Shown: positions 4,884 to 19,198 of the stretch, in pieces
Numbering within the stretch: position 1 is the stretch's first letter
Layout: the number at the start of each line of letters is the position of its first letter
IMG/VR virus record: IMGVR_UViG_3300045051_000720
Coordinates: 62,001-126,000 of that record
Length of the DNA: 64,000 nucleotides
Reading direction: 5' to 3' (one strand)
The notes under the pieces: generated by a model
The model's input: only the letters and a program-made list of their open reading frames with translations
Told to the model about the DNA's origin: nothing
Database searches by the model: none
Translations under genes and position numbers: made by a program

Positions 4884-4891
4884 TAGGTACC

Positions 4892-5687: not shown

Positions 5688-5708
5688 ACATTCTTAGCGA
5701 CCTTCACT

Positions 5709-7829: not shown

Positions 7830-7836
7830 GAGGCGC

Positions 7837-7865
7837 ATCATATACACACGAGGCGAGAACGTCAA
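7837..7865 (-). promoter_or_regulatory. sigma70-type promoter, probably leaderless, for the release factor gene
   Basis: TTGACG-N17-TATGAT, 7 nt before ATG 7829. Confidence 0.65.
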
Positions 7866-7880
7866 GCACAAAAGCTGGCG

Positions 7881-8528
7881 TTATCCCAGAAACGGCTTCC
7901 ACACGGGGTGCTTTGGGTCCTCGCGTAGATGCACGATCGGCGGCACACTCGCCGGAGCCTTCGGGCGCGGGCGCGGTAGACCCGCTTCTTCGGGGGTCTT
8001 GTCGGCCTTCATGGTGTTGATCCGCTTGTCGCAGGTGACGGTATTCTCCCATGTATCGCGACCACCTCGCGAGCGCGGATCGATGTGGTCAACCGACAGT
8101 TCGGCGCGGGTCAGTTTGCGCTTGGTGTAGGCGCAGATGAAGTTGTCGCGGCGGTGCACGTTACCCGTGGACCAGCGCGTGGTGCGCATGGGGATCTTGT
8201 CGAAGTGAGCACAGATGACCACCAGTGGCGCGCGGATGCGGCCCTCGGGATTGTCCGCACTGCGTCCGACGCCAATCCACAGGTCGCCTTCACGCACGGG
8301 CAGCTTAACCCAGTTTTCCCATGCGGTCGGTTGGGCACTGACCAGTACGTGATCGCCATTCTCGTCAACGGCGGTCGTGATGTCGAGCGCGTAGCCCGGG
8401 TGGTCTCCGTCAGACTGGGAGTTGAGAAACACCACCGCGTCTCTCACACTCATCTGATCTACGGGGGACCACGAGCGGTTGAGCTTGAGGACGATGGTCT
8501 TGTCGAGGATGCTGAGGTGATCGGACAT
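7881..8528 (-). CDS. HNH endonuclease (McrA-like)
   Basis: RDNFICAY, SVDHIDPRSRGG..TWENTV.C...N..KADKTPEEAG. Confidence 0.88.
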   Translation of the reverse strand: MSDHLSILDKTIVLKLNRSWSPVDQMSVRDAVVFLNSQSDGDHPGYALDITTAVDENGDHVLVSAQPTAWENWVKLPVREGDLWIGVGRSADNPEGRIRAPLVVICAHFDKIPMRTTRWSTGNVHRRDNFICAYTKRKLTRAELSVDHIDPRSRGGRDTWENTVTCDKRINTMKADKTPEEAGLPRPRPKAPASVPPIVHLREDPKHPVWKPFLG

Positions 8529-8577
8529 GGTGAGTGAGGGGCTAGAGTTAGGGTCTTTGTGTGATCTGATGGGAAAA

Positions 8578-8665
8578 TGGCGGAAGCGAGAGGGCACGAT
8601 CCCCAACGCACGAGTCGTCCTGCGGTGTAGCACACCGTGGCAGTCGCCTGACTGCTTTCGCTTCC
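8578..8665 (-). tRNA. tRNA-Ser(GCT)
   Basis: Cloverleaf, long variable arm, G73-CCA. Confidence 0.8.
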
Positions 8666-8666
8666 G

Positions 8667-8755
8667 TGGCGGTAACAAGTGGGGTTCAACCACTGTGCAA
8701 TGAAGCACACTCTGGGTTTCGGGTCCAGTCGAGGAAAACGTCCTCAGTTGCTACC
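8667..8755 (-). tRNA. tRNA-Ser(CGA)
   Basis: Cloverleaf, long variable arm, GCCA end. Confidence 0.75.
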
Positions 8756-8842
8756 GGCGGAGTGGTGCCGTACTGCCCGGCTGCCGGTTGCCCGACACAA
8801 CGCTTTCCAAGCGCCGTCCACCTCTAGGTGGCCCAACCCTCC
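8756..8842 (-). tRNA. tRNA-Ser(GGA)
   Basis: GGCGC-TTGGAAA-GCGTT anticodon arm, long variable arm, bulged acceptor stem. Confidence 0.72.
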
Positions 8843-8875
8843 AAAAAGATACAGACCCGAGCGGGGTCTGTAAAG

Positions 8876-8969
8876 TGGCGGTGAGTTGAGATCTTGCGTC
8901 CCAAGGCGGGGTTGGCCCTCCTCCATTCGCTTTCAAGGCGGCGGCAGCGCCTCGGCTGCTTAACTCACC
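8876..8969 (-). tRNA. tRNA-Ser(TGA)
   Basis: CTTGAAA loop, long variable arm, GCCA end. Confidence 0.8.
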
Positions 8970-8973
8970 AAAG

Positions 8974-9049
8974 TGGTGCGGACACCCCGAGTTGCACGGG
9001 GACTATCCCTCGTTAGGACCGAGGTTGACTGTCTGTTGCCGATGTCCGC
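8974..9049 (-). tRNA. tRNA-Arg(CCT)
   Basis: CCTCG-GTCCTAA-CGAGG arm, ACCA end. Confidence 0.82.
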
Positions 9050-9537
9050 GAAAAATACTTGTCGCGCTCGACGGTGCGGCGACCCAGCTCTGCGCTGAGG
9101 AAGGCTGTCATCTTGCCGTTGTGACTCATGAGCTTGTCGGCCCACCCCACCATCAGCTGGTTGGGGCACACAAACGGTCCGCGCGCGTTGACGATCAGTT
9201 GGTAGGCATCAGAGTAAGGTATCCTGTGGTGGACCAGCCAGATGAAGGCTGCTGCGCTTGACCGCGATACGCCTGCGAAGCAGTGAAAGAGGATGGACTG
9301 GTCGGGGCTGGTTTGGGCGTAGACACCCAGTAGCCGCCGTATCATCGCCTCTGTGGGAGCGAGAGGGTTGGACGAGTTGCCCGTATCAGCGAACACAAAT
9401 GAGTGGAGAGTGAAGGGGTACTTGAACGCTCGGATGTCGGGGCCGGGTTGGTGGACCTCGTGGAAAGAGATGATGTGGTCCAGCAGAACCGTCGCGAAGG
9501 CAGGAACCTCGGAGACGCCACAAATAGCGAAGGGCAT
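9013..9537 (-). CDS. Cys-dependent (dual-specificity / tyrosine) phosphatase
   Basis: HCFAGVSRS P-loop, FAD acid loop and PN motif; own promoter at 9543-9571. Confidence 0.9.
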   Translation of the reverse strand: MPFAICGVSEVPAFATVLLDHIISFHEVHQPGPDIRAFKYPFTLHSFVFADTGNSSNPLAPTEAMIRRLLGVYAQTSPDQSILFHCFAGVSRSSAAAFIWLVHHRIPYSDAYQLIVNARGPFVCPNQLMVGWADKLMSHNGKMTAFLSAELGRRTVERDKYFSRTSATDSQPRS

Positions 9538-9572
9538 AGCCGATGCTAGTCCGTAATGAGGGCGCTGTCAAG

Positions 9573-9665
9573 TGGCGCGAACGGCAGGATTCTCACCCAC
9601 ATCAGGGCCGAGCGGCCCTTCACCTGCGTTCGAAGCGCAGTTGACGCTATTATGTCGGCGTTCGC
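9573..9665 (-). tRNA. tRNA-Arg(TCG), long variable arm
   Basis: CTGCG-CTTCGAA-CGCAG arm, GCCA end. Confidence 0.8.
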
Positions 9666-9666
9666 A

Positions 9667-9755
9667 TGGTCTCGACGGCGAGAGTTGCACTCGCAGATTG
9701 GCTTGCGCCAGACGGTTTAGAGGACCGTTGCCTTGTCTACCCGAGCCCCGTCGAG
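9667..9755 (-). tRNA. tRNA-Arg(TCT), long variable arm
   Basis: ACGGT-CCTCTAA-ACCGT arm, ACCA end. Confidence 0.75.
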
Positions 9756-9760
9756 GGAAA

Positions 9761-9837
9761 TGGCGCGAGACCGGGGATTCAAACCCCGACTGATCCTCGT
9801 TCGCAACGAGGGCGACTATTCGGTTGCCGAGTCTCGC
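9761..9837 (-). tRNA. tRNA-Arg(GCG)
   Basis: CCTCG-TTGCGAA-CGAGG arm, GCCA end. Confidence 0.82.
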
Positions 9838-9932
9838 AAAGAGATTGCACCGTCCCCAGTCGATGCGTCGCTGGGGAGCAGGACACCAGTAGGACATCGC
9901 ATTAGTCCACCCGGAGATTCCACGGTGCAAAT

Positions 9933-10007
9933 TGGGGCGCACGACCGGATCTACCCCGGCCCTCCAAGCGTCACAGGCTCGGGTGCTTCTACTACACTAC
10001 GTGCGCC
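9933..10007 (-). tRNA. tRNA-His(GTG)
   Basis: G-1:C73 pair, CTGTGAC loop. Confidence 0.85.
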
Positions 10008-10013
10008 ATAAGG

Positions 10014-10089
10014 TGGAGCTTCAGTAGGGGTTCTCACCCTCCTCTCTCGGATACAAGCCGAGGCCATCGAATGTCTATGGGTCTGAAGC
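10014..10089 (-). tRNA. tRNA-Thr(TGT)
   Basis: CTCGG-CTTGTAT-CCGAG arm, CCA end. Confidence 0.82.
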
Positions 10090-10093
10090 GAAA

Positions 10094-10167
10094 TGGAGCC
10101 GAGGACCGGTAACGCTCCGGTGTCTATCGTTTACGAAACGATGGCTCTGCTTTTGAGCTACCAAGGC
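10094..10167 (-). tRNA. tRNA-Thr(CGT)
   Basis: ATCGT-TTCGTAA-ACGAT arm, CCA end. Confidence 0.85.
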
Positions 10168-10171
10168 AAAG

Positions 10172-10247
10172 TGGTGGTCCCGGGAGAGCAACGATCCTCC
10201 ACGTCACGCCTATAAAGCGCGCAGTCTGCCGATTAACTTACAGGACC
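10172..10247 (-). tRNA. tRNA-Ile(TAT)
   Basis: CGCGC-TTTATAG-GCGTG arm, ACCA end. Confidence 0.78.
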
Positions 10248-10361
10248 AAAAGGAGGGCATCGGAATCATCTCGGCGCGCAGTGTGCACCTTACGATCCGT
10301 CAGCCCTATAGGTGGTTTGTTTACGAGACGGTGCGTTTAACGACACAGGGCGCAAACGAAA

Positions 10362-10481
10362 TGGTTCCACGGCTCAGGTCGATCAACCCCACCTTTGGCC
10401 AGCCACCTCAGCGAGGTTTGGTAGCTCGTTAGGCCCTTCGCTTCTGACGCCTCCAGTTGGATTGCCCTCAGTGACCGTGAA
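10362..10481 (-). ncRNA. Oversized tRNA-like RNA (120 nt)
   Basis: TTCACGG/CCGTGGA acceptor-like stem plus ACCA; internal arms non-canonical. Confidence 0.45.
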
Positions 10482-10484
10482 AGA

Positions 10485-10570
10485 TGGTGGGCGTGGAGGG
10501 ATGCGAGCCCTCAAGGACAACGGAATTTGAACCCGTCGCTTCTACCAGTTTCGCTTTCGTCCACACGCCC
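10485..10570 (-). tRNA. tRNA-Leu(CAA), atypical architecture
   Basis: ACGGG-TTCAAAT-TCCGT arm; extra GGACG/TGTCC pairing. Confidence 0.8.
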
Positions 10571-10572
10571 GA

Positions 10573-10655
10573 TCGGCATGGTGGGATTCGGACCCACAGG
10601 GGATAGCGCATTTTAAGTGCGCCGGTTGTCGCCAGTTTCCCTTATCCACATGCCG
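10573..10655 (-). tRNA. tRNA-Leu(TAA), atypical architecture
   Basis: GCGCA-CTTAAAA-TGCGC arm; extra GGATA/TATCC pairing; CCA not encoded. Confidence 0.8.
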
Positions 10656-10661
10656 GTAAGA

Positions 10662-10736
10662 TGGTGGGACCATGGAGCCAACGCACTCCAATCTCCGCGC
10701 TGAGAACGCGGCGAACTACTCTTATTCGATGATCCC
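10662..10736 (-). tRNA. tRNA-Glu(CTC)
   Basis: CCGCG-TTCTCAG-CGCGG arm, ACCA end. Confidence 0.82.
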
Positions 10737-10737
10737 G

Positions 10738-10820
10738 TAGGCGTGGAGAGATTCGGACTCTCAAGGACACGTGATCCTAAGTCACGCGGTTCTGCCAATT
10801 TCCCTTCCGTCCACACGCCC
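10738..10820 (-). tRNA. tRNA-Leu(TAG), atypical architecture
   Basis: CGTGA-CTTAGGA-TCACG arm; extra GGACG/TGTCC pairing. Confidence 0.8.
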
Positions 10821-10826
10821 ATAAAA

Positions 10827-10917
10827 TGGTGGCCTCGGGGGGAGTCGGACCCCCACGCTACTATGATTTCGCTCGCGAATCTCATTCGCGCATGTCTACC
10901 AGTTCCATCACGAGGCC
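10827..10917 (-). tRNA. tRNA-Leu(GAG)
   Basis: Class II cloverleaf, ATGAGAT loop, ACCA end. Confidence 0.85.
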
Positions 10918-10994
10918 GAGGTCCCAGTCGGAGTTGCACCGACCCTGTTCGTCATTACCAATGACGCGCCGTGGCTACACTCGGCATTGGGACC
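10918..10994 (-). tRNA. tRNA-Thr(GGT)
   Basis: CGTCA-TTGGTAA-TGACG arm. Confidence 0.82.
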
Positions 10995-10999
10995 ATAAA

Positions 11000-11076
11000 T
11001 GGGGGCTCAGGTCAGATTTGCACTGACGACCGTCTCCGTATGGGGGAGCCGCGCTAGCTAGCTGCGCCACTGAGCC
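11000..11076 (-). tRNA. tRNA-Met(CAT) elongator (Ile2 not excluded)
   Basis: CTCC-CCCATAC-GGAG arm, CCA end. Confidence 0.72.
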
Positions 11077-11077
11077 G

Positions 11078-11153
11078 TGGTGGTCCCGTCGAGATTCGCA
11101 CTCGCCTCATCCGATTAAGAGTCGGAGTCCTCGCCTATCTAGGAGTCGAGACC
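11078..11153 (-). tRNA. tRNA-Lys(CTT)
   Basis: TCCGA-CTCTTAA-TCGGA arm, ACCA end. Confidence 0.87.
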
Positions 11154-11161
11154 GTAAAGTA

Positions 11162-11452
11162 TTCAACCGCGTAGCCGCGTTTCTGTTGCCGGGCCATCCC
11201 GACCGACATCCATTTCTCTCACCCACGGTCACCCGTGAACGGGTATCGTTTATAGACACCTGCACCAACCACGCCCTGCTTGACGGCCAGAACTAGCCTC
11301 GGGCTCCATTTGGCTTGCTGGTATCGTGTGGTTATCGCGAGTGTCTACCGACGTAACATCGTCGGGACTGCTCTCCCATCGACTTCTGTCCAGACGCGAA
11401 CTTGACCTCTACGCACGCATCGAGTGCGCGGCAGCGGATGTCTGCGGTTGAA
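11162..11452 (-). ncRNA. rnpB: RNase P RNA (compact, ~290 nt)
   Basis: P1 TTCAACCGC/GCGGTTGAA; P2 GACATCC/GGATGTC; CR-I GAGGTCAAGTTCGCGT pairing with CR-V AACAGAAACGCGGCTA (P4); CAGCAAGCCAAAT; GAGAGAAATG. Confidence 0.85.
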
Positions 11453-11455
11453 AGA

Positions 11456-11530
11456 TGGTGGAGGTACCGAGTGCCGCCCTCGGGCTTGAGTCATGCCATG
11501 ACCCTGTGCTGCTGTTATCACTATACCCCC
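11456..11530 (-). tRNA. tRNA-Ala(GGC)
   Basis: G3:U70 pair, ATGGCAT loop, ACCA end. Confidence 0.87.
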
Positions 11531-11604
11531 GCTGCCTCGGAGCGAATTGCACGCCCACCTAACACCTTCAGAGGGTGTCGGACTAGCTGTTATCCCACGA
11601 GGCA
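11531..11604 (-). tRNA. tRNA-Gln(CTG)
   Basis: U1-A72, ACACC-CTCTGAA-GGTGT arm. Confidence 0.85.
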
Positions 11605-11638
11605 AAAGTGATAGGGGTGACAAAACTGACCCGTCATT

Positions 11639-11709
11639 GGGTCAGTAGTGTAGTGGTAGCACGTCCGCCTGACTGGCGGGGGGCGCGGGTTCAAATCCCG
11701 TCTGATCCA
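11639..11709 (+). tRNA. tRNA-Val(GAC), inverted relative to the array
   Basis: Canonical GTGT-AGTGGTA-GCAC D arm and GGTTCAAATCC T loop on the + strand. Confidence 0.72.
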
Positions 11710-11715
11710 TTTAAT

Positions 11716-11791
11716 TGGCTGCCCACCACGGATGACAGCCGTGACCCTCGCCTTCAAAGGGCGGTATGCTTGACGTTTACATCAATGGGCA
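11716..11791 (-). tRNA. tRNA-Gln(TTG)
   Basis: CTTTGAA loop, GCCA end. Confidence 0.82.
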
Positions 11792-11798
11792 ATGAGAG

Positions 11799-11876
11799 TG
11801 GTCGGCGTGGAGGGATTCGCACCCCCGATCCTTCGCTTCCGGAGCGAGCATGTTGGCTAGGCTACACCACACGCCG
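11799..11876 (-). tRNA. tRNA-Pro(CGG)
   Basis: C1-G72, TCCGGAA loop, ACCA end. Confidence 0.85.
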
Positions 11877-11977
11877 ATATTGCGGGCCGGTTATCCATCC
11901 GGCGGCACCCGGCTTGATGGTGAGCAAGACGGAGACTCTGGAATTGGCGTGATTTTATGGCTCACGCCGCCGCAAAA

Positions 11978-12055
11978 TGGTCCTCGCGGCAGGCTTCGCT
12001 CCTGCGGCCTTCTGCATGTCGTGCAGCCGCTCTAACTGGGCTGAGCTACGCGAGG
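11978..12055 (-). tRNA. tRNA-Val(GAC)
   Basis: CTGC-ACGACAT-GCAG arm, ACCA end. Confidence 0.82.
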
Positions 12056-12060
12056 GAAAG

Positions 12061-12138
12061 TGGTCGGGCCAGTTGGATTCGCACCAACGATCTCATGCTC
12101 CCCGAGCATGCGCGATGACTAGGCTACGCTATGACCCG
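12061..12138 (-). tRNA. tRNA-Pro(GGG)
   Basis: CATGC-TCGGGGA-GCATG arm, ACCA end. Confidence 0.87.
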
Positions 12139-12237
12139 ATTGGCAGATACCGTCTGTTACTCCCACCGTGGTGTCCCGTCTGCCGCGGGGCTTTAGGTGG
12201 TGTTTGGGTAATCCAAACGTCTCGTGAACGGCTAAGA

Positions 12238-12336
12238 TGGCTGTACCGGTAGGAGCCGCCCCTACACCGCCGCAGGTCATGCGTACGGGCTCGCTTAACA
12301 GGCGAGTGCAACGAACGTGCTATTTGCCTCGGTACA
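12238..12336 (-). tRNA. tRNA-Asn(GTT), long variable arm
   Basis: CTCGC-CTGTTAA-GCGAG arm, GCCA end, 99 nt. Confidence 0.78.
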
Positions 12337-12342
12337 ATAAAA

Positions 12343-12418
12343 TGGTCGTCGCTGAGGGACTCGCACCCCCGAACCTCTGCGTGTAGGGCAGGTACCGTAG
12401 CTGCTGGGTCAAGCGACG
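12343..12418 (-). tRNA. tRNA-Val(TAC)
   Basis: CCTACAC loop, ACCA end. Confidence 0.82.
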
Positions 12419-12422
12419 AAAG

Positions 12423-12499
12423 TGGCGCGATAGATGGGTGCTGCCCCCACTTGTCTCGGCATAGACAGTGCCGCGAGCATGCTGTTGCTCTTCTACCGC
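12423..12499 (-). tRNA. tRNA-Asp(GTC)
   Basis: CGGCA-CTGTCTA-TGCCG arm, GCCA end. Confidence 0.85.
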
Positions 12500-12501
12500 G
12501 T

Positions 12502-12573
12502 ACGGATGGAGGGACTCGCACCCCCGTTATGTCCGGTCCCAAACCGGAAGCCATTGCTGCTAGGCGACATCCG
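12502..12573 (-). tRNA. tRNA-Pro(TGG)
   Basis: TCCGG-TTTGGGA-CCGGA arm. Confidence 0.8.
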
Positions 12574-12580
12574 TGTGAAA

Positions 12581-12653
12581 TGGATGCAGGGCCGAGGAAT
12601 CGCACCCGGTCAGGGCGACGGGTATGAACCGCGCTTGGTCTAACCTCCCTGCG
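12581..12653 (-). tRNA. Initiator-like tRNA-fMet(CAT) with reduced D arm
   Basis: C1:A72 mismatch, TTCATAC loop, CCA end. Confidence 0.7.
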
Positions 12654-12660
12654 TAAAGTG

Positions 12661-12810
12661 TTCCCTTTGTAGGCGTGCTCCAACGCCTCGTTGTTTGTCA
12701 AAATGGCCGGTGCTCTACCGTTGAGCTAGCATCCTCCTTGCGAAGGACCGCAGGTGTCGAACCTGTATCTCCGGCAAGTGTTACCTTGCGGGCTTTTGAC
12801 CTCTAGGGAA
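12661..12810 (-). ncRNA. YrlA-like Y RNA (circularly permuted tRNA-mimic domain on a long stem)
   Basis: T arm (CAGGTTCGACACCTG), then closed acceptor stem, then D arm (GCTCAACGGTAGAGC), enclosed by GCCGG/CCGGC, GTCAAAA/TTTTGAC and TTCCCT/AGGGAA stems. Confidence 0.72.
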
Positions 12811-12812
12811 AG

Positions 12813-12885
12813 TGGTGGAGCCCCGGGCATCGCAGCCCAACGACAGCCGGATTTTCAGTCCAGCCCGTGCACTCGCACTGACTCC
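12813..12885 (-). tRNA. tRNA-Phe(GAA)
   Basis: CTGGA-CTGAAAA-TCCGG arm, ACCA end; short D arm. Confidence 0.72.
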
Positions 12886-12943
12886 GGAGCCATCGTTAGG
12901 TCCGCCGATGGCGCAGGCGGTCTCGGGTTATTGACGAGGAAGA

Positions 12944-13020
12944 TGGGACGGACGGTGGGTAGCGCGCCCACATGAAGCCGGATTTGGAGTTCGGTGCCTT
13001 ACTTGTCGAGCCACGTCCGT
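12944..13020 (-). tRNA. tRNA-Trp(CCA)
   Basis: CTCCAAA loop, CCA end. Confidence 0.8.
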
Positions 13021-13195
13021 ATGAAAAGGTGGAGCGAAGAGATGGTCATTTATTCACCGGGCTGGGACCAATCCACGAGGTGCCCGATCCAGATGTCTCC
13101 TGCCTCGCTCCGTTTGGAGACCAACGAGTGATGTGGTGTCAGGTTCCTGTAGGCTTCACTGACACCGACCCGCGGCGTGAACCGCGAGGTGAAGA

Positions 13196-13269
13196 TGGTG
13201 GTCAAGTCGGGTGCTGCCCCCGCGTCTAACGGTTATCGACCGTTGGCTCTACTGTTGAGCTACATGACC
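13196..13269 (-). tRNA. tRNA-Ile(GAT)
   Basis: AACGG-TCGATAA-CCGTT arm, ACCA end. Confidence 0.87.
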
Positions 13270-13399
13270 AAAATTGCTGTCGCGGTCAACCCGCGTTTCG
13301 GCTCAGCTTGGCCGTTTGCAAAATGGCGACTACGTTAACCAGTCTTGACCGGAGGCGTGCTTGCGGGCGCGTCGTAGCCCGTTGGGTATTAGCCCAAAG

Positions 13400-13491
13400 T
13401 GGTGGACCCGGAGGGAGTTGCACCCCCGACGCCCCGTTAGGGGTCCAGATTTACAGTCTGGTGCAGCCATCTGACAGCTACCTCGTGGTCC
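13400..13491 (-). tRNA. tRNA-Tyr(GTA)
   Basis: CCAGA-CTGTAAA-TCTGG arm, long variable arm, ACCA end. Confidence 0.85.
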
Positions 13492-13497
13492 GAAAAA

Positions 13498-13572
13498 TGG
13501 AGCGTCGTGCGGGACTCCCACCCGCGTGTGTCTGCTTGGAAGGCAGATGCCTTGGTTCTCGGCCAACGACGC
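13498..13572 (-). tRNA. tRNA-Gly(TCC)
   Basis: TCTGC-CTTCCAA-GCAGA arm, TCCA end. Confidence 0.87.
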
Positions 13573-13632
13573 ATGGGGTTTATCGCCACCGCGGAGCGGC
13601 TGATTGGTTACAGCGGGGTGGAAGCCCCAAGA

Positions 13633-13707
13633 TGGTGGAGTCAACGAGATCCGCCCTCGTATGTCACGGATGCAAACCGTGTGCCTTTCTATGTCGGCCA
13701 TGACCCC
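13633..13707 (-). tRNA. tRNA-Ala(TGC)
   Basis: G3:U70, CACGG-TTTGCAT-CCGTG arm. Confidence 0.87.
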
Positions 13708-13709
13708 AT

Positions 13710-13781
13710 TGGACCCGGCGAGTGCCGCCCTCGCGCCTCCGCGTTGCGAACGCAGCGTGCTACTGTTGTCACCACGAGCCC
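13710..13781 (-). tRNA. tRNA-Ala(CGC)
   Basis: G3:U70, CTGCG-TTCGCAA-CGCGG arm. Confidence 0.85.
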
Positions 13782-13786
13782 GAAAA

Positions 13787-13967
13787 GAGTGACACGATAG
13801 ACTTGTCCGGCAGTCTGGGGAGTCTTGCGGGACTCCTATGGCCTAAACCACGTCTTACGCCGCCTCTTGCCTTAACGCGCGGCCCTTTCCCTTGCGGGTA
13901 CTCAGGGGCTCATCGGCTGTGGATAGAGGACGGACTGTTGGTCCGGGTAGTATCTATCGTGTTGCCC
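13787..13967 (-). ncRNA. 6S-RNA-like rod (~180 nt)
   Basis: Closing stem ACACGATAGAT/GTCTATCGTGT, internal stems, central bubble with 3-prime hairpin GGAGTC-CCGCAA-GACTCC. Confidence 0.45.
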
Positions 13968-14053
13968 CGGTTAGGATCGACTCCGCCGAGGCGAAAAAGG
14001 ATGCCGGACCCCAGCTTTCGCTTGCGGGCGTCCCCTCGCGGGTCCGACGTAAG

Positions 14054-14129
14054 TGGAGGCGCGCCACGGTGCTGCCCCGTGCAAACAGTGTTTTGCAAAC
14101 ACGTCTCGTCGCTGGCTGAGTCGCGCGCC
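14054..14129 (-). tRNA. tRNA-Cys(GCA)
   Basis: TTGCAAA loop, U73-CCA. Confidence 0.85.
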
Positions 14130-14176
14130 ATTGAGCTAACCACGCCAAGGGGGACCAACAGGTGTCGCTCAGGAAA

Positions 14177-14252
14177 TGGTGGGTCCATCGGGCATCGATC
14201 CCGCTTCCACGGTTTAAAAGACCGCTGCTAATCCGGCTACAGCTCTGGACCC
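14177..14252 (-). tRNA. tRNA-Lys(TTT)
   Basis: GCGGT-CTTTTAA-ACCGT arm, ACCA end. Confidence 0.85.
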
Positions 14253-14254
14253 AT

Positions 14255-14326
14255 TGCGGGTAGGGAGACTTGCGCTCCCCTCTCAGCCTTGGCAAAGCCG
14301 TGCGTCGCTATCTACGCTTCACCCGC
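14255..14326 (-). tRNA. tRNA-Gly(GCC)
   Basis: CGGCT-TTGCCAA-GGCTG arm. Confidence 0.82.
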
Positions 14327-14427
14327 GAAAAGTGTCCGATGGGAGAACTGTCAAACCCCCTATGCCCTATGCGCATGGCGTCTCGTTGGTCGGACCCAAC
14401 GGCAGGTATCGATCCTGCGAACATGAC

Positions 14428-14502
14428 GGTGACCGCACCCGGATTCCCACCGGGGTTCTTCGCTGGAAAGGCGAGAGTACTGGGGTGCTATACGATGCGG
14501 CC
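14428..14502 (-). tRNA. tRNA-Glu(TTC)
   Basis: TCGC-CTTTCCA-GCGA arm. Confidence 0.82.
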
Positions 14503-14515
14503 AAAAGTGGGCTGA

Positions 14516-15118
14516 CTACGAAGCCGTCCGACCAGTCGCCGGAGTGAGAAATGACGGAACACAAGGACGGTCAGGACGATTATACCGACTCCTTGGACAG
14601 AGAGCACCTAAAGGTAGAGCCGGTGGGGTAATCTTAGGCGCGTTCTCCCTCTTCCGTTTGTGTTCTATTTGACCATGAAAGCGATCAAATCCTAGCATTC
14701 TAGCGGCTGTGATAGCAACGTGATGGTCTTGTGTCTGTCCGAGACGAAAGGAGAGATCGTTGCGATCTTCTAGTCCGAAATCTTTGACGAGCTTATCTTT
14801 TTGGGAGCTGGTCAGATACTGGAAGATAGCCCTTCGATGAATACTTCGAGGCTCTTTCACCGTTGGCTTGTTTCGGGTAGCCCTTTCTGCGCGGTGATGT
14901 GCCTCGTGACAATCCCGACACAGTACCTCCAGATCCTCCATTCGTTCGTTACCACCTACCCGTTCGTAGGTTTTGTGATGGACATCGGTGCCGTGTTCAT
15001 GACATCGATTACAAACGGGACCATAGTAAGCAATCGCCTCAGCCCGCTTGGCCTTCCAGATGGGTGACTGGAGGTATTGACGATGGAGCAATTGATTGTC
15101 GGTAAGATGCTGGGCCAC
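14516..15118 (-). CDS. HNH endonuclease
   Basis: YLQSPIWKAKR...CNRC...VHHKTY...DLEVLCRDCHEAHH. Confidence 0.88.
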   Translation of the reverse strand: MAQHLTDNQLLHRQYLQSPIWKAKRAEAIAYYGPVCNRCHEHGTDVHHKTYERVGGNERMEDLEVLCRDCHEAHHRAERATRNKPTVKEPRSIHRRAIFQYLTSSQKDKLVKDFGLEDRNDLSFRLGQTQDHHVAITAARMLGFDRFHGQIEHKRKRENAPKITPPALPLGALCPRSRYNRPDRPCVPSFLTPATGRTAS

Positions 15119-15132
15119 GGGTGATATATACC

Positions 15133-15161
15133 ATGATAGCTCGCTATCCGCCTACTGTCAA
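15133..15161 (-). promoter_or_regulatory. Internal sigma70-type promoter before the HNH gene
   Basis: TTGACA-N17-TATCAT; lacks the spacer YAAC element. Confidence 0.65.
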
Positions 15162-15403
15162 TCGCTGTAAAGTGACCATCGCGCAAGCCGGACCAATGGC
15201 CCTGTTGAACGCCTCGCGCACTCAGCTGCGATGGTAACGTCTGCATCTAGAGACCCTTGCCGCGCAATCGGGCAGGTGAGAGGAGCTTGTTAACGCCTAC
15301 AAGCGGAGATAGCATGACTTGATAGGCTCATGCGGGCCGTAGACGCAGGTTGAAGAACATGGCTTCACGCCACACTCTGGGTGTGCATCTGACCTCGACT
15401 GCG

Positions 15404-15415
15404 ATTTCAAAGACC
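15404..15415 (-). promoter_or_regulatory. boxA-like antitermination element
   Basis: GGTCTTTGAAAT just downstream of the attenuator terminator. Confidence 0.45.
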
Positions 15416-15425
15416 TGCTCTAGCT

Positions 15426-15456
15426 AACAAAAAGACCCACCTATCTGGTGGGTCTC
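15426..15456 (-). terminator. Attenuator intrinsic terminator
   Basis: AGACCCACC-AGATA-GGTGGGTCT hairpin followed by TTTTGTT. Confidence 0.88.
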
Positions 15457-15481
15457 GGAAAGGATTAGACTGGATGTCGTC

Positions 15482-15607
15482 TTAGGTCCCGAGACCCCCT
15501 GTGGTGACCGGCTTGGCGTTCAGCCAAAAGCTGATCATATCCACGCACGTATACCCTTCACGGAGGGACCGTGTCGTGGGCAGTGGTGACTTTTGGAGGT
15601 GGGACAT
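15482..15607 (-). CDS. Attenuator leader peptide (41 aa, contains all 20 amino acids)
   Basis: MSHLQKSPLPTTRSLREGYTCVDMISFWLNAKPVTTGGLGT-stop; last codons GGGTCTCGGGA complement TTCCGAGACCC of the terminator 5-prime arm. Confidence 0.78.
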   Translation of the reverse strand: MSHLQKSPLPTTRSLREGYTCVDMISFWLNAKPVTTGGLGT

Positions 15608-15637
15608 TGAAGGTGAGAAAAGTGAAGGTTGAGGCGA

Positions 15638-15698
15638 TATACACCCGCACGGTGCGGGTTTATATCGACATCATAGGCGAGTTAGACGCGCTCGTCAA
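15638..15698 (-). promoter_or_regulatory. Tandem promoters for the leader / tRNA unit
   Basis: TTGACG-N17-TATGAT (15698-15670) and ATAAAC-N12-GGTGTATA (15663-15638). Confidence 0.7.
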
Positions 15699-15766
15699 GG
15701 GTTGGTTGCGCTGATCTCGCGTGGGTTGTGTAACACACTGGCGCGGAGCAGGTTGGGTATAAAGAA

Positions 15767-15909
15767 AGGATGGATGGGGTTACGACCCACTGATTGACCG
15801 TTCACGTACCACGTTCGTACGCCGGTTTGTCTTTCGACCGTGTGCGTTCTGATGGTCAGCACACTCGCGTCATCAACCGTAGCGTGTCAGCAATCCACGC
15901 CGCCATCCT
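15767..15909 (-). ncRNA. Expanded tRNA-like RNA B
   Basis: AGGATGG/CCATCCT acceptor stem, GCGTG-GATTGCTGA-CACGC D-like arm, GTGGG-TCGTAAC-CCCAT T-like arm, ~90 nt insert. Confidence 0.55.
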
Positions 15910-16047
15910 AAAGGTCAACTCCCCTTGACGCGCGTGAGTGGCCTGAAGCAAGGTCGGCATTGCGCCCGAGGGTAGCAATCCTAGTCGCGGTACCGTCAGA
16001 GGCGCGCCAGAGGGGGAGTTCAAGGAGGGAGCGACCCACCAAGAGAA

Positions 16048-16170
16048 TGGATAGGTCGGGCGCAACTCCGACTGGTAGGTTTCCCCACGCCGGGCGCGCC
16101 TTTCGGCGGACCACTTGTTGAGGCTTACTCCGCATTACGCTTGCATGTCTGCTTTCCATGCCGCTATCCA
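16048..16170 (-). ncRNA. Expanded tRNA-like RNA A
   Basis: TGGATAG/CTATCCA acceptor stem, GCATG-GAAAGCAGA-CATGC D-like arm, GTCGG...CCGAC T-like arm, ~70 nt insert. Confidence 0.55.
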
Positions 16171-16634
16171 AAAGGATGCCCACCCCTTGCGTTCGCCATC
16201 TTGGGCGACCCAAAGCGTGTCATTCGGGACATGCATCCTAGCTCGTGCTCGACGGGTTGTGATGGTTGTCATGAGACAAGCGCATCGCCGGTAAGGGAGG
16301 ATAGAGCCAGACCACGCGCGACCGCGAGTGATCGTGTATACCTTGAGGGGTGGGCAGAGGGGATGAGAAAGAACAAAAGGGGGCGAGCCGCTGTTATGAG
16401 GTTACGGCTCAGGCGAATGAATGACCACGGCAGCGCAAGGAGGAAAACAGATAAACTCCCTCGCCACAGCGCCTCATTACCCGTCAGTATCCCACGCCAT
16501 CGCGAGACCTGACACTCGGCTTTTACGTGGTACCAAGTCGGGGATGTAACTGACTAGCCTGCTCGGCCGCCACTATTCCCGGCGGGATTGCCCCGCTATG
16601 CACCCGCCGTTGCGGGAAGTGAAAGAACGTATCC

Positions 16635-16714
16635 TATACACCCCATGGTAGGCGTGTTGGATGGCACTGTCAAGAGAGATTGGCGTTGACAGTGGGGTCT
16701 AACCCGACTAGACT
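16635..16714. promoter_or_regulatory. Divergent promoter pair
   Basis: - strand TTGACA-N17-TACCAT (16673-16645) plus GGTGTATA; + strand TTGACA-N17-TAGACT (16686-16714). Confidence 0.75.
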
Positions 16715-16720
16715 GAGGGG

Positions 16721-17428
16721 ATGAAGTACATGGGGTCCAAAGCGCGCTATACCAAGAGCATCTTACCCATCATCCTTGCCAACCGCGCGCCCGACCAATG
16801 GTATGTTGAGCCGTTCGTAGGCGGAGCCAATGTGATTGACAAGGTATCGGGGCCGCGCATCGGGGCCGACATCAATCCTTACCTCATCGCCCTGCTAGAG
16901 GCGCTACGGGATGGTTGGATACCACCACGGTTGACCCGCGACGAATATAACACCATCCGCGCGGACAAGGGCGCACACGAGACCTGTTTGGTTGGCTGGG
17001 CCGGTGTTGGCTGCTCATACAGCGGCAAATGGTTTGGCGGCTATGCTGGTACCGTTCAAACCCGAGACGGGGTCCGCGATTACATCGCCGAGGCTATCGC
17101 CAACGCGACGCGGCAGGCCAAGGGATTAGCGGGAGCCGAGTTTGTCAGTCTGTCGTACGACCAGATCACTTTGCCACCATCGAGCCTTGTGTACTGTGAC
17201 CCGCCCTATGCGGACACAACCTCATACGCTAACACGTTTGACACGCCTGCGTTTTGGGAGTGGTGTTGTCATGCTGTGGACGCTGGCCATCGGGTGTTTG
17301 TCTCGGAGTATCGTGCCCCCGAGGACTGGTGCTGTGTGTGGGAAGGTCGGGCGACGAGCAGCTTGTCGGCCAACGGCAAGTGTGGAGGTAACAAAGTCTC
17401 GACCGAGAGATTATTCACCAAGGGTTGA
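16721..17428 (+). CDS. DNA adenine methyltransferase (Dam / D12 class)
   Basis: KYMGSK, YVEPFVGGA, YCDPPY. Confidence 0.9.
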   Translation: MKYMGSKARYTKSILPIILANRAPDQWYVEPFVGGANVIDKVSGPRIGADINPYLIALLEALRDGWIPPRLTRDEYNTIRADKGAHETCLVGWAGVGCSYSGKWFGGYAGTVQTRDGVRDYIAEAIANATRQAKGLAGAEFVSLSYDQITLPPSSLVYCDPPYADTTSYANTFDTPAFWEWCCHAVDAGHRVFVSEYRAPEDWCCVWEGRATSSLSANGKCGGNKVSTERLFTKG

Positions 17429-18356: not shown

Positions 18357-19198
18357 CCTACACCGAGCCCCCCCTTGCCGTCCTCGTCCTTGACTTCGAG
18401 CGTGAGGAGGAGACCCGTGCATGTCTCGCCTCCATCCGCGACCACATCAAGATCCCGCACAAGGTCATCTATCTCCATAACGGACCCGCTGATTACCCTT
18501 CCGCCCTCCTCAAGGAGGGACTCATCCACCAGCTCATCCAGCCCGCAACGAATAACGGCCTCGGCATCGGGACGCGCGATCTGTTCGCGGCATCGTTTAG
18601 TCGCTACTCGCTCTACCTCCAACCCGATCAGGTCTTGCGTGTGGACATCACTCCCGAGGTCTTCGCCAACCTGACGGGCATGCTGGGGGGTAAGATGATG
18701 CTCCAGATCAAGGACGAACCCACGCCGCGCGATTCAGGGTGGACGGTCGCGTCTGTCAGCCTCGCCGGACAAGTGTGTGGTCCAAGTGAGTACAGTGAAA
18801 GGGCACACCTCATCGAGACGGCCTTCTATAAAGGGTTGGAGTGGAACGGATTGCCGTGCCACGGCGCAGGACCTTATCACGATGGCGAGTGGCGCGAGGC
18901 TACCATTCAGCGGTACTACCGCGAGCACCAGCTCATTCACGCGACCCATCTCCCTCCCCTCGTAGAGGACCGAGGCTATCGTGCGCGACGCCAGAATCCG
19001 GATGGTTCGGTGTGGGAGCACCAACCCGACACGAAGGCCTTGACACTTGTGCGCGGGCCGGTGCGCGAACGGTATGTGTATCCCAAGCTCAGTCCGCGCG
19101 AGTGGGAGTCTGTGCTGGCTACGCAGGCATGGCCGGCGGGCCAGATTCCTGAGGACGAGGTCAAGGACAGCTTCACGGTACCCCATTGGCACGCATGA
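18353..19198 (+). CDS. Glycosyltransferase (GT-A / GT2-like)
   Basis: LAVLVLDF.R...CLASI, HNG, NNGLGIG, YLQPD. Confidence 0.7.
   Translation: MTYTEPPLAVLVLDFEREEETRACLASIRDHIKIPHKVIYLHNGPADYPSALLKEGLIHQLIQPATNNGLGIGTRDLFAASFSRYSLYLQPDQVLRVDITPEVFANLTGMLGGKMMLQIKDEPTPRDSGWTVASVSLAGQVCGPSEYSERAHLIETAFYKGLEWNGLPCHGAGPYHDGEWREATIQRYYREHQLIHATHLPPLVEDRGYRARRQNPDGSVWEHQPDTKALTLVRGPVRERYVYPKLSPREWESVLATQAWPAGQIPEDEVKDSFTVPHWHA

What the first reader, a model, noticed from the sequence alone, without database searches (positions are those of the whole stretch)
15426..15698. Pan-amino-acid leader-peptide attenuator in front of a complete phage tRNA array
SEEN: on the - strand two promoters precede an unannotated 41-codon ORF (15607-15482), MSHLQKSPLPTTRSLREGYTCVDMISFWLNAKPVTTGGLGT. 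All 20 amino acids occur by residue 31, and residues 16-33 (REGYTCVDMISFWLNAKP) are 18 consecutive different residues. Under a uniform-frequency model that is 20!/(2 x 20^18), about 5e-6 per window. Repeated residues often use different synonymous codons (Pro CCA/CCC/CCG, Thr ACG/ACA/ACC, Ser TCC/TCA/AGC, Arg CGG/CGT, Val GTG/GTC). The last codons (GGGTCTCGGGA) can form 11 bp with TTCCGAGACCC, which overlaps the 5-prime arm of a strong terminator (AGACCCACC-AGATA-GGTGGGTCT-TTTTGTT) about 25 nt past the stop. Downstream lie a boxA-like element and 42 co-oriented tRNAs for all 20 amino acids. KNOWN: this is the geometry of trp/his/thr-type attenuators, which use runs of one or a few amino acids. 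INFERENCE: a ribosome reaching the stop masks the antiterminator (array off), while stalling at any sensor codon frees it (array on). The phage would then sense loss of any aminoacyl-tRNA, e.g. by host anticodon-nuclease defences or starvation, and deploy a replacement tRNA set. I know of no description of such a universal sensor. CAVEATS: a sigma70-like promoter at 15161-15133 lies downstream of the terminator and could bypass it, and the leader has no SD (common in this genome).
Basis: partly seen in the sequence, partly recalled or inferred. Interest (0 to 1): 0.96.

Follow-up and report, generated by a model that had tools for sequence, protein, structure and literature searches.

The report
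Leader-peptide attenuator before phage tRNA array
A short, conserved gene-like stretch and an on/off transcription stop signal sit in front of a large phage's set of tRNA genes, and probably switch those tRNAs on when the cell's protein synthesis falters; the principle is known from bacteria, but this use of it is not described.

Summary
The sequence features are real. There is a 41-codon ORF (15607-15482, minus strand) with all 20 amino acids, a strong intrinsic terminator (15456-15432), and an alternative pairing between the ORF's last codons and the terminator's 5' arm.

The window is from a 219-kb IMG/VR phage contig with no relative among deposited phages. I found nine related loci through a neighbouring PIF1 helicase. 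Seven carry the same module upstream of a syntenic tRNA array.

In all seven:
- only this reading frame is open;
- the ORF has 19-20 amino-acid types in 41-59 codons, against 13-17 in the other frames;
- the terminator's 5' arm pairs with the ORF's 3' end (p 0.002-0.02 each against shuffles) although the arm sequences differ.

Four relatives have no sigma70-like promoter between terminator and array.

Ribosome-mediated attenuation is the best explanation. It is untested experimentally.

Selection for full amino-acid coverage has only moderate support (combined p about 0.005-0.02). Two relatives are counter-examples.

The single-sequence statistic was overstated. All 20 types in about 41 residues is a roughly 1% event.

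The mycobacterial whiB7 uORF is a published precedent, so this is a new variant of a known kind.

The parts
15670..15698 (-). sigma70-like promoter of the leader (TTGACG-17-TATGAT)
   Evidence: Promoter scan gives 10 of 12 matches. The same promoter sits at the same place in L047, L213, L226 and L229.
15638..15659 (-). 5' stem-loop (ACCCGCACCGTGCGGGT) overlapping the recurrent motif GGTGTATA
   Evidence: The stem-loop is in the MFE fold. Its stem differs in sequence but is kept in homologues. GGTGTATA occurs 8 times in the window against 0.95 expected. The same hairpin plus motif precedes the gene starting at 626 on the minus strand.
15608..15637 (-). C/U-rich 5' UTR without a Shine-Dalgarno sequence
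   Evidence: Read from the sequence. The same kind of upstream context precedes the ribonucleotide reductase, RecA-like and other genes of this genome.
15482..15607 (-). leader ORF, 41 codons plus TAA, encoding all 20 amino acids
   Evidence: Homologous ORFs lie in the same frame in six relatives. The other two frames are closed in all seven.
15559..15573 (-). internal hairpin A (CACGG-UCCCU-CCGUG), followed by GGGUAU at 15556-15551; candidate RNA polymerase pause hairpin
   Evidence: It is present in the nascent-RNA folds of all seven homologues, with unrelated stem sequences at the same place in the ORF. The pause function is inferred.
15513..15527 (-). internal hairpin B (UUGGC-UGAAC-GCCAA) over the F-W-L-N-A-K codons
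   Evidence: The flanking Ser codon switches between AGC, TCG and TCC in homologues, which argues for a protein-level constraint.
15487..15499 (-). antiterminator 5' arm (GGGGGUCUCGGGA), codons 37-41, ending 3 nt before the stop codon
   Evidence: It pairs with 15460-15450 in the MFE and nascent folds. Duplex energy is -22.1 kcal/mol against a shuffle mean of -11.9, p = 0.002.
15450..15460 (-). antiterminator 3' arm (UUCCGAGACCC), overlapping the terminator's 5' arm
   Evidence: RNAalifold picks this helix as the consensus structure, with two compensatory pairs.
15426..15456 (-). intrinsic terminator GAGACCCACC-AGAUA-GGUGGGUCUU followed by UUUGUU
   Evidence: Terminator scan. Hairpin energy is -22.1 kcal/mol. 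A terminator is present at the same position in all relatives, with covarying stems.
15403..15415 (-). boxA-like element GGUCUUUGAAAUC; a second candidate UGUUCUUCAACC lies at 15359-15348
   Evidence: Read from the sequence. GGTCTTTGA is invariant between the window and L229. GGTTCTTTGTGTGA, TTCTTTGACAA and GCTCTTTGATA follow the terminator in L046/L047, L225 and L209. NusB/NusE binding is inferred.
15170..15345 (-). conserved untranslated segment between the boxA-like element and the HNH promoter
   Evidence: About 93% identical to L229. Nothing was found by Rfam or ARAGORN. MFE z = -0.31.
14516..15161 (-). inserted HNH endonuclease gene with its own sigma70-like promoter (15161-15133)
   Evidence: Pfam HNH. 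Promoter matches 11 of 12. The gene is absent at this place in L046, L047, L213, L226 and L231. L229 has a different ORF there.
8578..14502 (-). tRNA array: about 35 genes detected, 18 amino-acid specificities, interspersed with ORFs
   Evidence: ARAGORN and Infernal. The order Ser...Arg...Gly, Ala, Lys, Glu is syntenic with arrays in relatives.

Best explanation
This is a ribosome-mediated (leader-peptide type) transcription attenuator that gates a phage tRNA operon.

PROPOSED MECHANISM
1. Host RNA polymerase starts at the sigma70-like promoter (15698-15670). It transcribes a 5' stem-loop and a Shine-Dalgarno-less 41-codon ORF.
2. The polymerase probably pauses at the hairpin in the middle of the ORF (hairpin A plus GGGUAU).
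3. If a ribosome translates smoothly to the end of the ORF, it occupies or unwinds GGGGGUCUCGGGA (codons 37-41) just as the polymerase makes the terminator. The terminator hairpin then forms and transcription stops at about 15426.
4. If the ribosome is held up anywhere in roughly the first 33 codons, or never loads, that segment pairs with UUCCGAGACCC. This sequesters the terminator's 5' arm.
5. The polymerase then reads through, passes a boxA-like element, and transcribes the long untranslated tRNA array.

Because the ORF samples all 20 amino acids, mostly once each, the switch would respond to shortage of almost any charged tRNA or to general translation stress. It would give negative feedback on tRNA supply.

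SHOWN: the anatomy, its conservation, the covariation, frame conservation and the thermodynamic switch.

INFERRED: translation of the ORF, pausing, coupling, the inducing signal and boxA function.
For: - The ORF, terminator and alternative pairing are present as described.
- Seven homologous leaders come from phages whose PIF1 helicases are 55-77% identical.
- The start codon (ATG in 5, GTG in 2) is at the same place, and only this frame is open.
- Indels are in-frame.
- Ser is kept through switches between AGC, TCG and TCC, and Leu through CTG, TTG and TTA.
- Synonymous versus nonsynonymous codon differences are 10 versus 9 for window against L229.
- In all seven, the nascent fold pairs the terminator's 5' arm with the ORF's last codons, 2-23 nt before the stop.
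- Duplex energies are -14 to -26 kcal/mol, with p 0.002-0.02 against dinucleotide shuffles. A nominal Fisher combination gives 7e-10, but homologues are not independent.
- RNAalifold chooses this helix, with compensatory pairs.
- Terminator stems covary with it three ways.
- Footprint-constrained folding gives antiterminator for A-site codons 1 to about 33-47, and terminator for the last 9-13 codons, in the window, L213, L046, L231 and mostly L226.
- No sigma70-like promoter lies between terminator and first tRNA in L046, L047, L213 or L231.
- Amino-acid types are 20, 20, 19, 20, 19, 19, 20 in frame 0 against 13-17 in the other frames.
- The absence of a Shine-Dalgarno sequence is the norm in this genome.
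- The same 5' UTR design precedes a 188-aa gene.
- Precedent: single codons in the diverse whiB7 uORF suffice to sense Trp or His starvation (PMC10274678).
Against: - There are no expression, Ribo-seq or Term-seq data, and the host is unknown.
- L225 (PIF1 63%) has only a 20-codon ORF with 13 amino-acid types and a weak antiterminator.
- L209 has 18 types and no antiterminator at the ORF end.
- In L047 and L229 the equilibrium fold is the terminator wherever the ribosome is placed.
- The distance from the antiterminator arm to the stop codon varies from 2 to 23 nt. In L226 and L231 a ribosome at the stop would not cover the arm.
- Ancestry-corrected support for selection on amino-acid coverage is modest, with Fisher p about 0.005-0.02.
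- High triplet diversity is seen in all three frames, so codon variety is not frame-specific.
- In the window, the HNH promoter (15161-15133) and an upstream promoter followed by a boxA-like element (16673-16645) could feed the array independently of the switch.
- The phage encodes a sigma-like protein, so unrecognised phage promoters cannot be excluded.
Confidence: 0.55

Rival explanations
1. This is a factor-dependent processive antitermination module of the lambda PR'-qut-tR' type or the put/boxA type. A constitutive promoter makes a short terminated RNA until a phage or host factor modifies RNA polymerase so that it ignores the terminator. Candidates are a Q-like protein acting at the -10-like GGTGTATA element, or a Nus/boxA complex. 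The ORF would be incidental or would encode a small protein.
For: - The architecture (promoter, then about 230 nt, then a strong terminator, then a long operon) resembles the lambda late region (my knowledge).
- A -10-like motif, GGTGTATA, recurs downstream of promoters: 8 occurrences against 0.95 expected.
- BoxA-like elements follow the terminator and the upstream promoter.
- The phage encodes a sigma-like protein at 2951-3622.
Against: - This model does not explain the conserved open frame, the in-frame indels or the synonymous codon switches.
- It does not explain the covarying pairing between the ORF end and the terminator's 5' arm.
- No Q-like gene was identified.
- The two mechanisms could coexist.
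Confidence: 0.13
2. This is a nascent-peptide sensor of the TnaC/SecM/SpeFL type. The conserved residues of the peptide (His near the N-terminus, G-Y, F/S-W-L, G-L-G) would arrest the ribosome in response to a small molecule or other signal. That arrest, rather than tRNA supply, would set the antiterminator or terminator choice.
For: - Some residues are conserved at the protein level through non-synonymous-looking codon switches, such as Ser AGC/TCG/TCC before F-W-L.
- Trp is invariant in the four-sequence alignment (A2) and is present in all seven leader peptides.
- Arrest peptides that control terminators are known (PMC8429421 and 10.1101/604074, listed).
Against: - Most conserved residues coincide with RNA elements: GGUCUC in the antiterminator arm, GGGUAU after hairpin A, and UGG in hairpin B. 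The constraint may therefore lie in the RNA.
- The peptide is otherwise poorly conserved, at 25-63% identity.
- There is no similarity to known arrest motifs.
Confidence: 0.1
3. This is an independent small gene or small RNA with its own terminator. It would have no regulatory link to the tRNA array, which would be transcribed from other promoters: phage-specific ones, or the HNH promoter in this genome.
For: - A strong promoter lies downstream of the terminator in the window.
- The leader RNA is unusually stable for its composition, z = -4.2.
- L225 keeps a terminator with only a rudimentary ORF.
Against: - The module always sits immediately upstream of the array, in the same orientation, in seven genomes.
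- Four relatives have no sigma70-like promoter after the terminator.
- An alternative helix that competes with the terminator is conserved and is as stable as the terminator. A simple gene end has no use for that.
Confidence: 0.12
4. This is an RNA-only switch (riboswitch, T-box-like element or thermosensor). The structured leader would bind a ligand or an uncharged tRNA, and the ORF would not be translated.
For: - Hairpins A and B and the 5' stem-loop are kept by covariation.
- The leader's MFE z-score is -4.2.
Against: - There was no Rfam match, including T-box, even at E up to 1.
- The frame is open only in frame 0 in all seven.
- Amino-acid diversity is frame-specific.
- The loop between the antiterminator arms is not conserved.
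Confidence: 0.07

Closest known systems
whiB7 uORF transcription attenuator of mycobacteria and other Actinobacteria (PMC10274678)
   Same: - A short upstream ORF is followed by a rho-independent terminator with a competing antiterminator.
- Efficient translation gives termination, and stalled translation gives read-through.
- The uORF is long and compositionally diverse. The M. smegmatis version has every amino acid except Cys.
- Single codons determine which amino-acid shortages are sensed.
   Different: - The output here is a phage tRNA operon, not a transcription factor.
- There is no alanine enrichment.
- The leader family shares no sequence similarity with whiB7 leaders.
- The element is viral, and a boxA-like element follows it.
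Classic leader-peptide attenuators of amino-acid operons (trpL, hisL, thrL, leuL, pheL, ilvL)
   Same: - A leader ORF sits upstream of the operon.
- Antiterminator and terminator are mutually exclusive.
- The stop codon lies next to the antiterminator's 5' arm.
- A hairpin inside the ORF could serve as a pause site.
   Different: - There are no tandem runs of one regulatory codon. Instead the ORF has maximal amino-acid variety.
- There is no conserved anti-antiterminator (1:2) helix, so the untranslated RNA defaults to read-through in the window rather than to super-attenuation.
- There is no Shine-Dalgarno sequence.
uORF or leader sensors of general translation stress (E. coli toiL, PMC12121999; B. 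subtilis vmlR leader, PMC9226507)
   Same: Ribosome stalling in a short ORF is converted into read-through of a downstream termination signal.
   Different: Those respond mainly to ribosome-targeting antibiotics and control toxin-antitoxin or resistance genes. I know them only from the abstracts listed.
rrn-type boxA antitermination and the lambda PR'-tR' late-gene module
   Same: - A long untranslated operon is preceded by boxA-like elements.
- A short promoter-proximal transcript ends at a strong terminator.
   Different: Those do not use a translated leader or an alternative helix that competes with the terminator.
T-box riboswitches
   Same: They sense tRNA charging and act through an antiterminator/terminator choice.
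   Different: - T-boxes bind one specific uncharged tRNA directly and are not translated.
- No T-box match was found here.

Membership tests
Leader-peptide (ribosome-mediated) transcription attenuators | A short ORF with start and stop codons lies in the leader, upstream of the regulated genes and on the same strand | tested here: met
   The 41-codon ORF lies at 15607-15482. Homologous ORFs of 43-59 codons are present in six relatives, and only this frame is open.
Leader-peptide (ribosome-mediated) transcription attenuators | An intrinsic terminator lies between the leader ORF and the regulated genes | tested here: met
   The terminator lies at 15456-15426. Terminators of -18 to -23 kcal/mol are present in all seven homologues.
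Leader-peptide (ribosome-mediated) transcription attenuators | An antiterminator helix excludes the terminator and is conserved by covariation | tested here: met
   It is seen in the nascent folds of all seven. It beats shuffles with p 0.002-0.02 each. RNAalifold picks it as consensus, with 2 compensatory pairs.
Leader-peptide (ribosome-mediated) transcription attenuators | The antiterminator's 5' arm is placed so that a ribosome finishing the ORF masks it, while a ribosome stalled upstream does not | tested here: inconclusive
   The arm ends 2-13 nt before the stop in five homologues but 16-23 nt before it in L231 and L226. The footprint model gives the expected switch in 5 of 7 and always the terminator in L047 and L229.
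Leader-peptide (ribosome-mediated) transcription attenuators | Clustered regulatory codons for the cognate amino acid | tested here: not met
   There are no tandem runs, and 19-20 amino-acid types mostly occur once or twice. This departs from trp/his-type leaders but matches the whiB7 type.
Leader-peptide (ribosome-mediated) transcription attenuators | The leader ORF is translated and read-through responds to ribosome stalling | not testable with these tools
   There is only indirect support: frame conservation, synonymous codon switches, and a genome-typical Shine-Dalgarno-less start context.
Leader-peptide (ribosome-mediated) transcription attenuators | The regulated genes lie in the same transcription unit, with no promoter after the terminator | tested here: inconclusive
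   This holds for sigma70-like promoters in L046, L047, L213 and L231. It does not hold in the window, where the HNH promoter lies at 15161-15133. Phage-specific promoters cannot be scanned.
whiB7-type broad-spectrum uORF attenuator | A diverse uORF whose composition sets which amino-acid shortages are sensed | tested here: inconclusive
   The composition is met: 19-20 types in the reading frame only, and enriched over nulls. The sensing itself was not tested.
whiB7-type broad-spectrum uORF attenuator | Homology to whiB7 leaders, or a whiB7 gene downstream | tested here: not met
   The downstream genes are tRNAs. The peptide profile search found only the leader's own family.
T-box riboswitch | Match to the T-box covariance model (Stem I with specifier, T-box bulge) | tested here: not met
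   There was no Rfam hit in 4500-17000 at E up to 1, other than tRNAs.
rrn-type boxA antitermination site | A boxA consensus (about GCTCTTTAACAA or TTCTTTGA) lies in the transcript downstream of the promoter | tested here: inconclusive
   GGTCTTTGAAATC lies at 15415-15403 and is conserved in L229. Related motifs follow the terminator in L046, L047, L225 and L209. The motifs are short, no statistics were done, and NusB/NusE binding is untestable here.

The most novel reading that the evidence does not exclude
The leader ORF has been selected to contain every amino acid, and many different codons. Loss of any single charged tRNA would then stall the ribosome and switch on the phage's own near-complete replacement tRNA set. 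Possible causes are anticodon-nuclease defences, phage-induced host shut-off or starvation. The newly made tRNAs would then restore translation of the leader and switch the array off again. This would be a virus-encoded, self-correcting monitor of the whole tRNA pool.
Probability: 0.3. Interest if true: 0.9.

Novelty: new variant of a known kind. Interest (0 to 1): 0.77.

Why it matters
Phage tRNA arrays are usually discussed in terms of codon usage or escape from tRNA-targeting defences. How their expression is controlled is largely unknown.

A conserved translation-sensing switch in front of such an array would mean the phage measures the state of the host's translation apparatus and supplies tRNAs on demand. 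That links transcription attenuation, so far a bacterial metabolic and stress device, to virus-host conflict over tRNAs.

The proposal is directly testable. The promoter looks like a standard sigma70 promoter and the whole module is only about 280 nt. It would also give a compact natural sensor of general aminoacyl-tRNA supply.

The published whiB7 uORF shows that single codons can confer such sensing. This makes the proposal plausible, and it also means the principle itself is not new.

Tried and rejected
SEARCHES THAT FOUND NOTHING USEFUL
- DNA searches of deposited phages, both near and distant, found nothing.
- Protein searches there gave only remote hits.
- The adjacent DNA methylase has many IMG/VR relatives but is not a synteny marker. 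Those loci have no tRNA arrays and share no other genes.
- The PIF1 helicase as a single query in IMG/VR found only 27-28% relatives.
- A PIF1 profile found IMG/VR relatives below 50% identity, almost all without the array.
- The genome-contig scan gave bacterial PIF1 genes only, with a best hit of 45%.
- The one metagenome scan, with a two-motif pattern from the post-terminator region, returned 10 chance matches.
- The same pattern found nothing in IMG/VR.
- A profile search with the four leader peptides against 5.8 billion proteins found only one 35-aa gene call from a relative. Gene finders almost never call this ORF.

TESTS THAT DID NOT HELP
- MAFFT misaligned L213 and L231 in the antiterminator region. 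I therefore relied on per-sequence folding with shuffles rather than on alignment-based pair counts.
- Codon diversity as evidence: it exceeds genes and random ORFs but is equally high in the other two frames. I do not count it as frame-specific evidence.
- I looked upstream of tRNA arrays in unrelated phages. L030 and L066 have a roughly 30-codon ORF ending about 50 nt before a terminator, with only 15 amino-acid types. This was not pursued.
- The roughly 950-nt ORF-free stretch upstream is not unusually structured, z = -0.64.
- Asn and Asp tRNAs could not be located.

Full report
WHAT IS THERE

On the minus strand, the window carries the following elements in order:
- a sigma70-like promoter (15698-15670, TTGACG-17-TATGAT);
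- a 5' stem-loop;
- a C/U-rich stretch without a Shine-Dalgarno sequence;
- a 41-codon ORF (15607-15482, MSHLQKSPLPTTRSLREGYTCVDMISFWLNAKPVTTGGLGT);
- 25 nt further on, a strong intrinsic terminator (15456-15432 plus UUUGUU).

The fold is more stable than all 200 shuffles, z = -4.2.

Downstream of the terminator lie, in order:
- boxA-like elements;
- a 175-nt conserved segment;
- an HNH endonuclease gene (14516-15118; Pfam HNH) with its own promoter matching 11 of 12 positions (15161-15133);
- a tRNA array (14502-8578).

In the array I could confirm about 35 tRNA or tRNA-like genes with 18 amino-acid specificities. I could not confirm 42 tRNAs or all 20 specificities.

HOW UNUSUAL IS THE SINGLE SEQUENCE?

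It is less unusual than claimed on one count.
- All 20 amino-acid types in a 41-residue peptide occurs in about 1% of same-length windows of this clade's proteins.
- It occurs in 0.55% of six-frame ORFs of 38-44 codons.
- That is roughly one such ORF per 64-kb window by chance.

The all-different 18-residue run is rarer. There are 2 in the window and none among 2.5 million background 18-mers.

The window's codon variety, 30 distinct of 41, is ordinary. The case therefore rests on comparison with relatives.

RELATIVES

The window is part of IMGVR_UViG_3300045051_000720, a 219-kb contig. It has no relative among deposited phages.

The neighbouring PIF1 helicase (5637-7100) has many relatives at 50-77% identity in Logan and NCBI assemblies. 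Fetching their contexts showed a family of roughly 170-200-kb phages with syntenic tRNA arrays.

Seven genomes carry the same module just upstream of the array: the window, L047, L229, L213, L226, L046 and L231. The module consists of promoter, 5' stem-loop with GGTGTATA, C/U-rich spacer, ORF and terminator.

Two genomes are divergent:
- L225 has a 20-codon ORF that keeps only the C-terminal L-G-L-G part, with a weak alternative pairing.
- L209 has a 47-codon ORF with 18 amino-acid types and no pairing at the ORF end.

IS THE ORF CODING?

Evidence that it is:
- The start codon is at the same place in all seven (ATG in 5, GTG in 2).
- The frame is open in all seven, while both other frames carry 1-6 stops.
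- Length differences are in-frame.
- Ser before F-W-L is kept through AGC, TCG and TCC, and Leu through CTG, TTG and TTA.
- Between the window and L229, 10 of 19 differing codons are synonymous.

The missing Shine-Dalgarno sequence is not an argument against translation. Most genes here lack one, including the ribonucleotide reductase and RecA-like genes. Many genes look leaderless. A 188-aa gene starting at 626 has the same hairpin, GGTGTATA and C/U-rich 5' UTR.

Gene finders almost never call the ORF.

IS THERE A REAL ANTITERMINATOR?

I folded the nascent RNA of each homologue before the terminator's 3' arm exists. In every one, the terminator's 5' arm pairs with the last codons of the ORF, the G-L-G codons, 2-23 nt before the stop.

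The arms differ in sequence between genomes, and the partners change with them. The terminator's 5' arm reads:
- GAGACCCACC in the window;
- GAGACCTGCC in L047;
- GAGACTCACC in L229;
- AGACCCAC in L226;
- CCAAACCCGCCC in L046;
- GAACCGACTCCTC in L213;
- GAGACCCGG in L231.

Duplex energies of -14 to -26 kcal/mol match those of the terminators. They beat dinucleotide shuffles of the ORF end in each case, p 0.002-0.02. A nominal Fisher combination gives 7e-10, but homologues are not independent. RNAalifold selects this helix as the consensus structure, with two compensatory pairs.

A hairpin in mid-ORF (15573-15559 in the window) is also kept, with unrelated stem sequences. It is followed by GGGUAU and is a candidate pause site. 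The pause function is inferred.

DOES RIBOSOME POSITION FLIP THE SWITCH?

I masked a 30-nt footprint at each A-site codon and refolded.
- In the window, L213, L046, L231 and mostly L226, the antiterminator forms for codons 1 to about 33-47.
- In the same five, the terminator forms for the last 9-13 codons, including the stop.
- L047 and L229 give the terminator throughout at equilibrium. There the model would need kinetic, co-transcriptional formation of the antiterminator.
- Without any ribosome, the window's RNA defaults to the antiterminator.

IS THE ARRAY UNDER THIS CONTROL?

In L046, L047, L213 and L231, no sigma70-like promoter lies between the terminator and the first tRNA.

In the window and L229, an endonuclease-type gene has been inserted there. 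The window's copy brings its own promoter, which can bypass the switch.

An upstream promoter (16673-16645), followed by a boxA-like element and about 950 nt of ORF-free sequence, may also feed in.

IS FULL AMINO-ACID COVERAGE SELECTED?

The seven ORFs have 20, 20, 19, 20, 19, 19 and 20 amino-acid types in 41-59 codons. The other two frames of the same DNA have 13-17.

Rare residues (Cys, Asn, Asp, Phe, Ile, Met, Glu) sit at different positions in different homologues.

For a conservative test I left out the window, since it was the discovery case. I fixed every residue identical to any earlier sequence and redrew the rest at random. This gives conditional probabilities of 0.02-0.55 per homologue, a product of 5e-6 to 7e-7, and a Fisher p of about 0.005-0.02.

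This is suggestive, not decisive, and L225 and L209 are exceptions. Triplet diversity is high in all frames, so I do not count codon variety as independent evidence.

COMPARISON WITH KNOWN SYSTEMS

The geometry is that of leader-peptide attenuators, but without runs of one regulatory codon.

The closest described system is the whiB7 uORF attenuator of mycobacteria (PMC10274678).
- Efficient uORF translation gives a rho-independent terminator, and stalling gives an antiterminator.
- Removing its single Trp codon or its His codons removes the response to that amino acid only.

This shows that one codon per amino acid can be enough.

I found no paper describing an attenuator in front of a phage tRNA array. 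Rfam has no matching family.

VERDICT

This is a real, conserved regulatory leader. It is most likely a ribosome-mediated attenuator of a phage tRNA operon (confidence about 0.55). Rivals are processive antitermination, a nascent-peptide sensor, an unrelated small gene and an RNA-only switch.

The idea that it evolved as a universal monitor of the tRNA pool is attractive and not excluded (about 0.3).

It is a new variant of a known kind and is of high interest because it is small, conserved and directly testable.

Noticed in passing
window 15700-16673 (minus strand): A promoter (16673-16645, 10 of 12 matches) is followed by GGGGTGTATAGG, a boxA-like GTTCTTTC, and about 950 nt without a credible ORF. 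A second hairpin, U-tract and GTTCTTTC module lies at about 16400-16360. Blocks are 70-84% identical in L047 and partly in L229 and L213. The MFE z-score is only -0.64, and Rfam finds nothing.
   Followed up: partly
window 15170-15345 (minus strand); L229 20075-20240: This segment between the terminator and the HNH gene is about 93% identical to L229, far more conserved than the leader ORF. It ends in an ACCATCGC...GCGATGGT stem followed by the CACTTTAC spacer typical of the tRNA array. It may be an atypical tRNA-like RNA, but ARAGORN and Rfam are silent.
   Followed up: partly
window 652-659, 15638-15645, 16635-16642, 28983-28990, 40386-40393, 48911-48918, 53826-53833, 59206-59213: The motif GGTGTATA occurs 8 times against 0.95 expected. 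In three cases it lies just downstream of a promoter, and twice it is preceded by an ATAAACC stem-loop. It could be a phage-specific promoter element, a sigma-dependent pause site or a 5'-UTR element.
   Followed up: partly
window 35153, 47468, 53105, 4883 (minus), 9537 (minus) and others: Many genes have a TAnnAT hexamer 6-7 nt before the start codon and no Shine-Dalgarno sequence. This suggests widespread leaderless or near-leaderless mRNAs, and a host that tolerates them.
   Followed up: no
window 7097-7582 (minus) and 9013-9537 (minus): Next to the array lies a GGQ-motif protein whose counterparts in relatives are annotated with the RF-1 domain (an ArfB/PrfH-like peptidyl-tRNA hydrolase). 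Inside the array lies a Cys-phosphatase-like protein (HCxxGxxRS; counterparts in relatives annotated DSPc). The same kinds of gene sit at the same places in relatives. Both are further translation- or RNA-related genes.
   Followed up: partly
window 11638-11710 (+): The best-scoring tRNA in the window (tRNA-Val GAC, 60 bits) lies antisense to the otherwise co-oriented array, between the two tRNA-Gln genes.
   Followed up: no
window 14516-15118, 7881-8708, 918-1847; L047 12583-13827; L231 6261-7097: The arrays and their leaders are peppered with mobile endonuclease genes, at different places in different relatives: HNH, LAGLIDADG, GIY-YIG and an IS605-type TnpB. In L047 the TnpB gene ends right at the leader promoter.
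   Followed up: partly
L047 12195-12255, L213 13820-13880, L226 about 14370-14401, L046 about 18450-18460: The motif CAACGTCCGAAAGGCTTTACA, plus a further 40 nt or so, lies directly after the terminator. It is nearly identical between L047 and L213 and partly kept in L226 and L046, but is replaced in the window and L229. Its function is unknown. It could be a processing site, a factor-binding site or a phage promoter.
   Followed up: no
L030 about 2140-2200 and L066 about 1295-1350: Two unrelated large phages also have a roughly 30-codon ORF ending about 50 nt before a terminator upstream of their tRNA arrays. Each ORF has 15 amino-acid types. This may be coincidence.
   Followed up: no
window 2951-3622 (minus): This ORF has a sigma-70 region-4-like C-terminus, so the phage may direct its own promoter class. 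That limits what a sigma70-consensus scan can say about transcription units.
   Followed up: no
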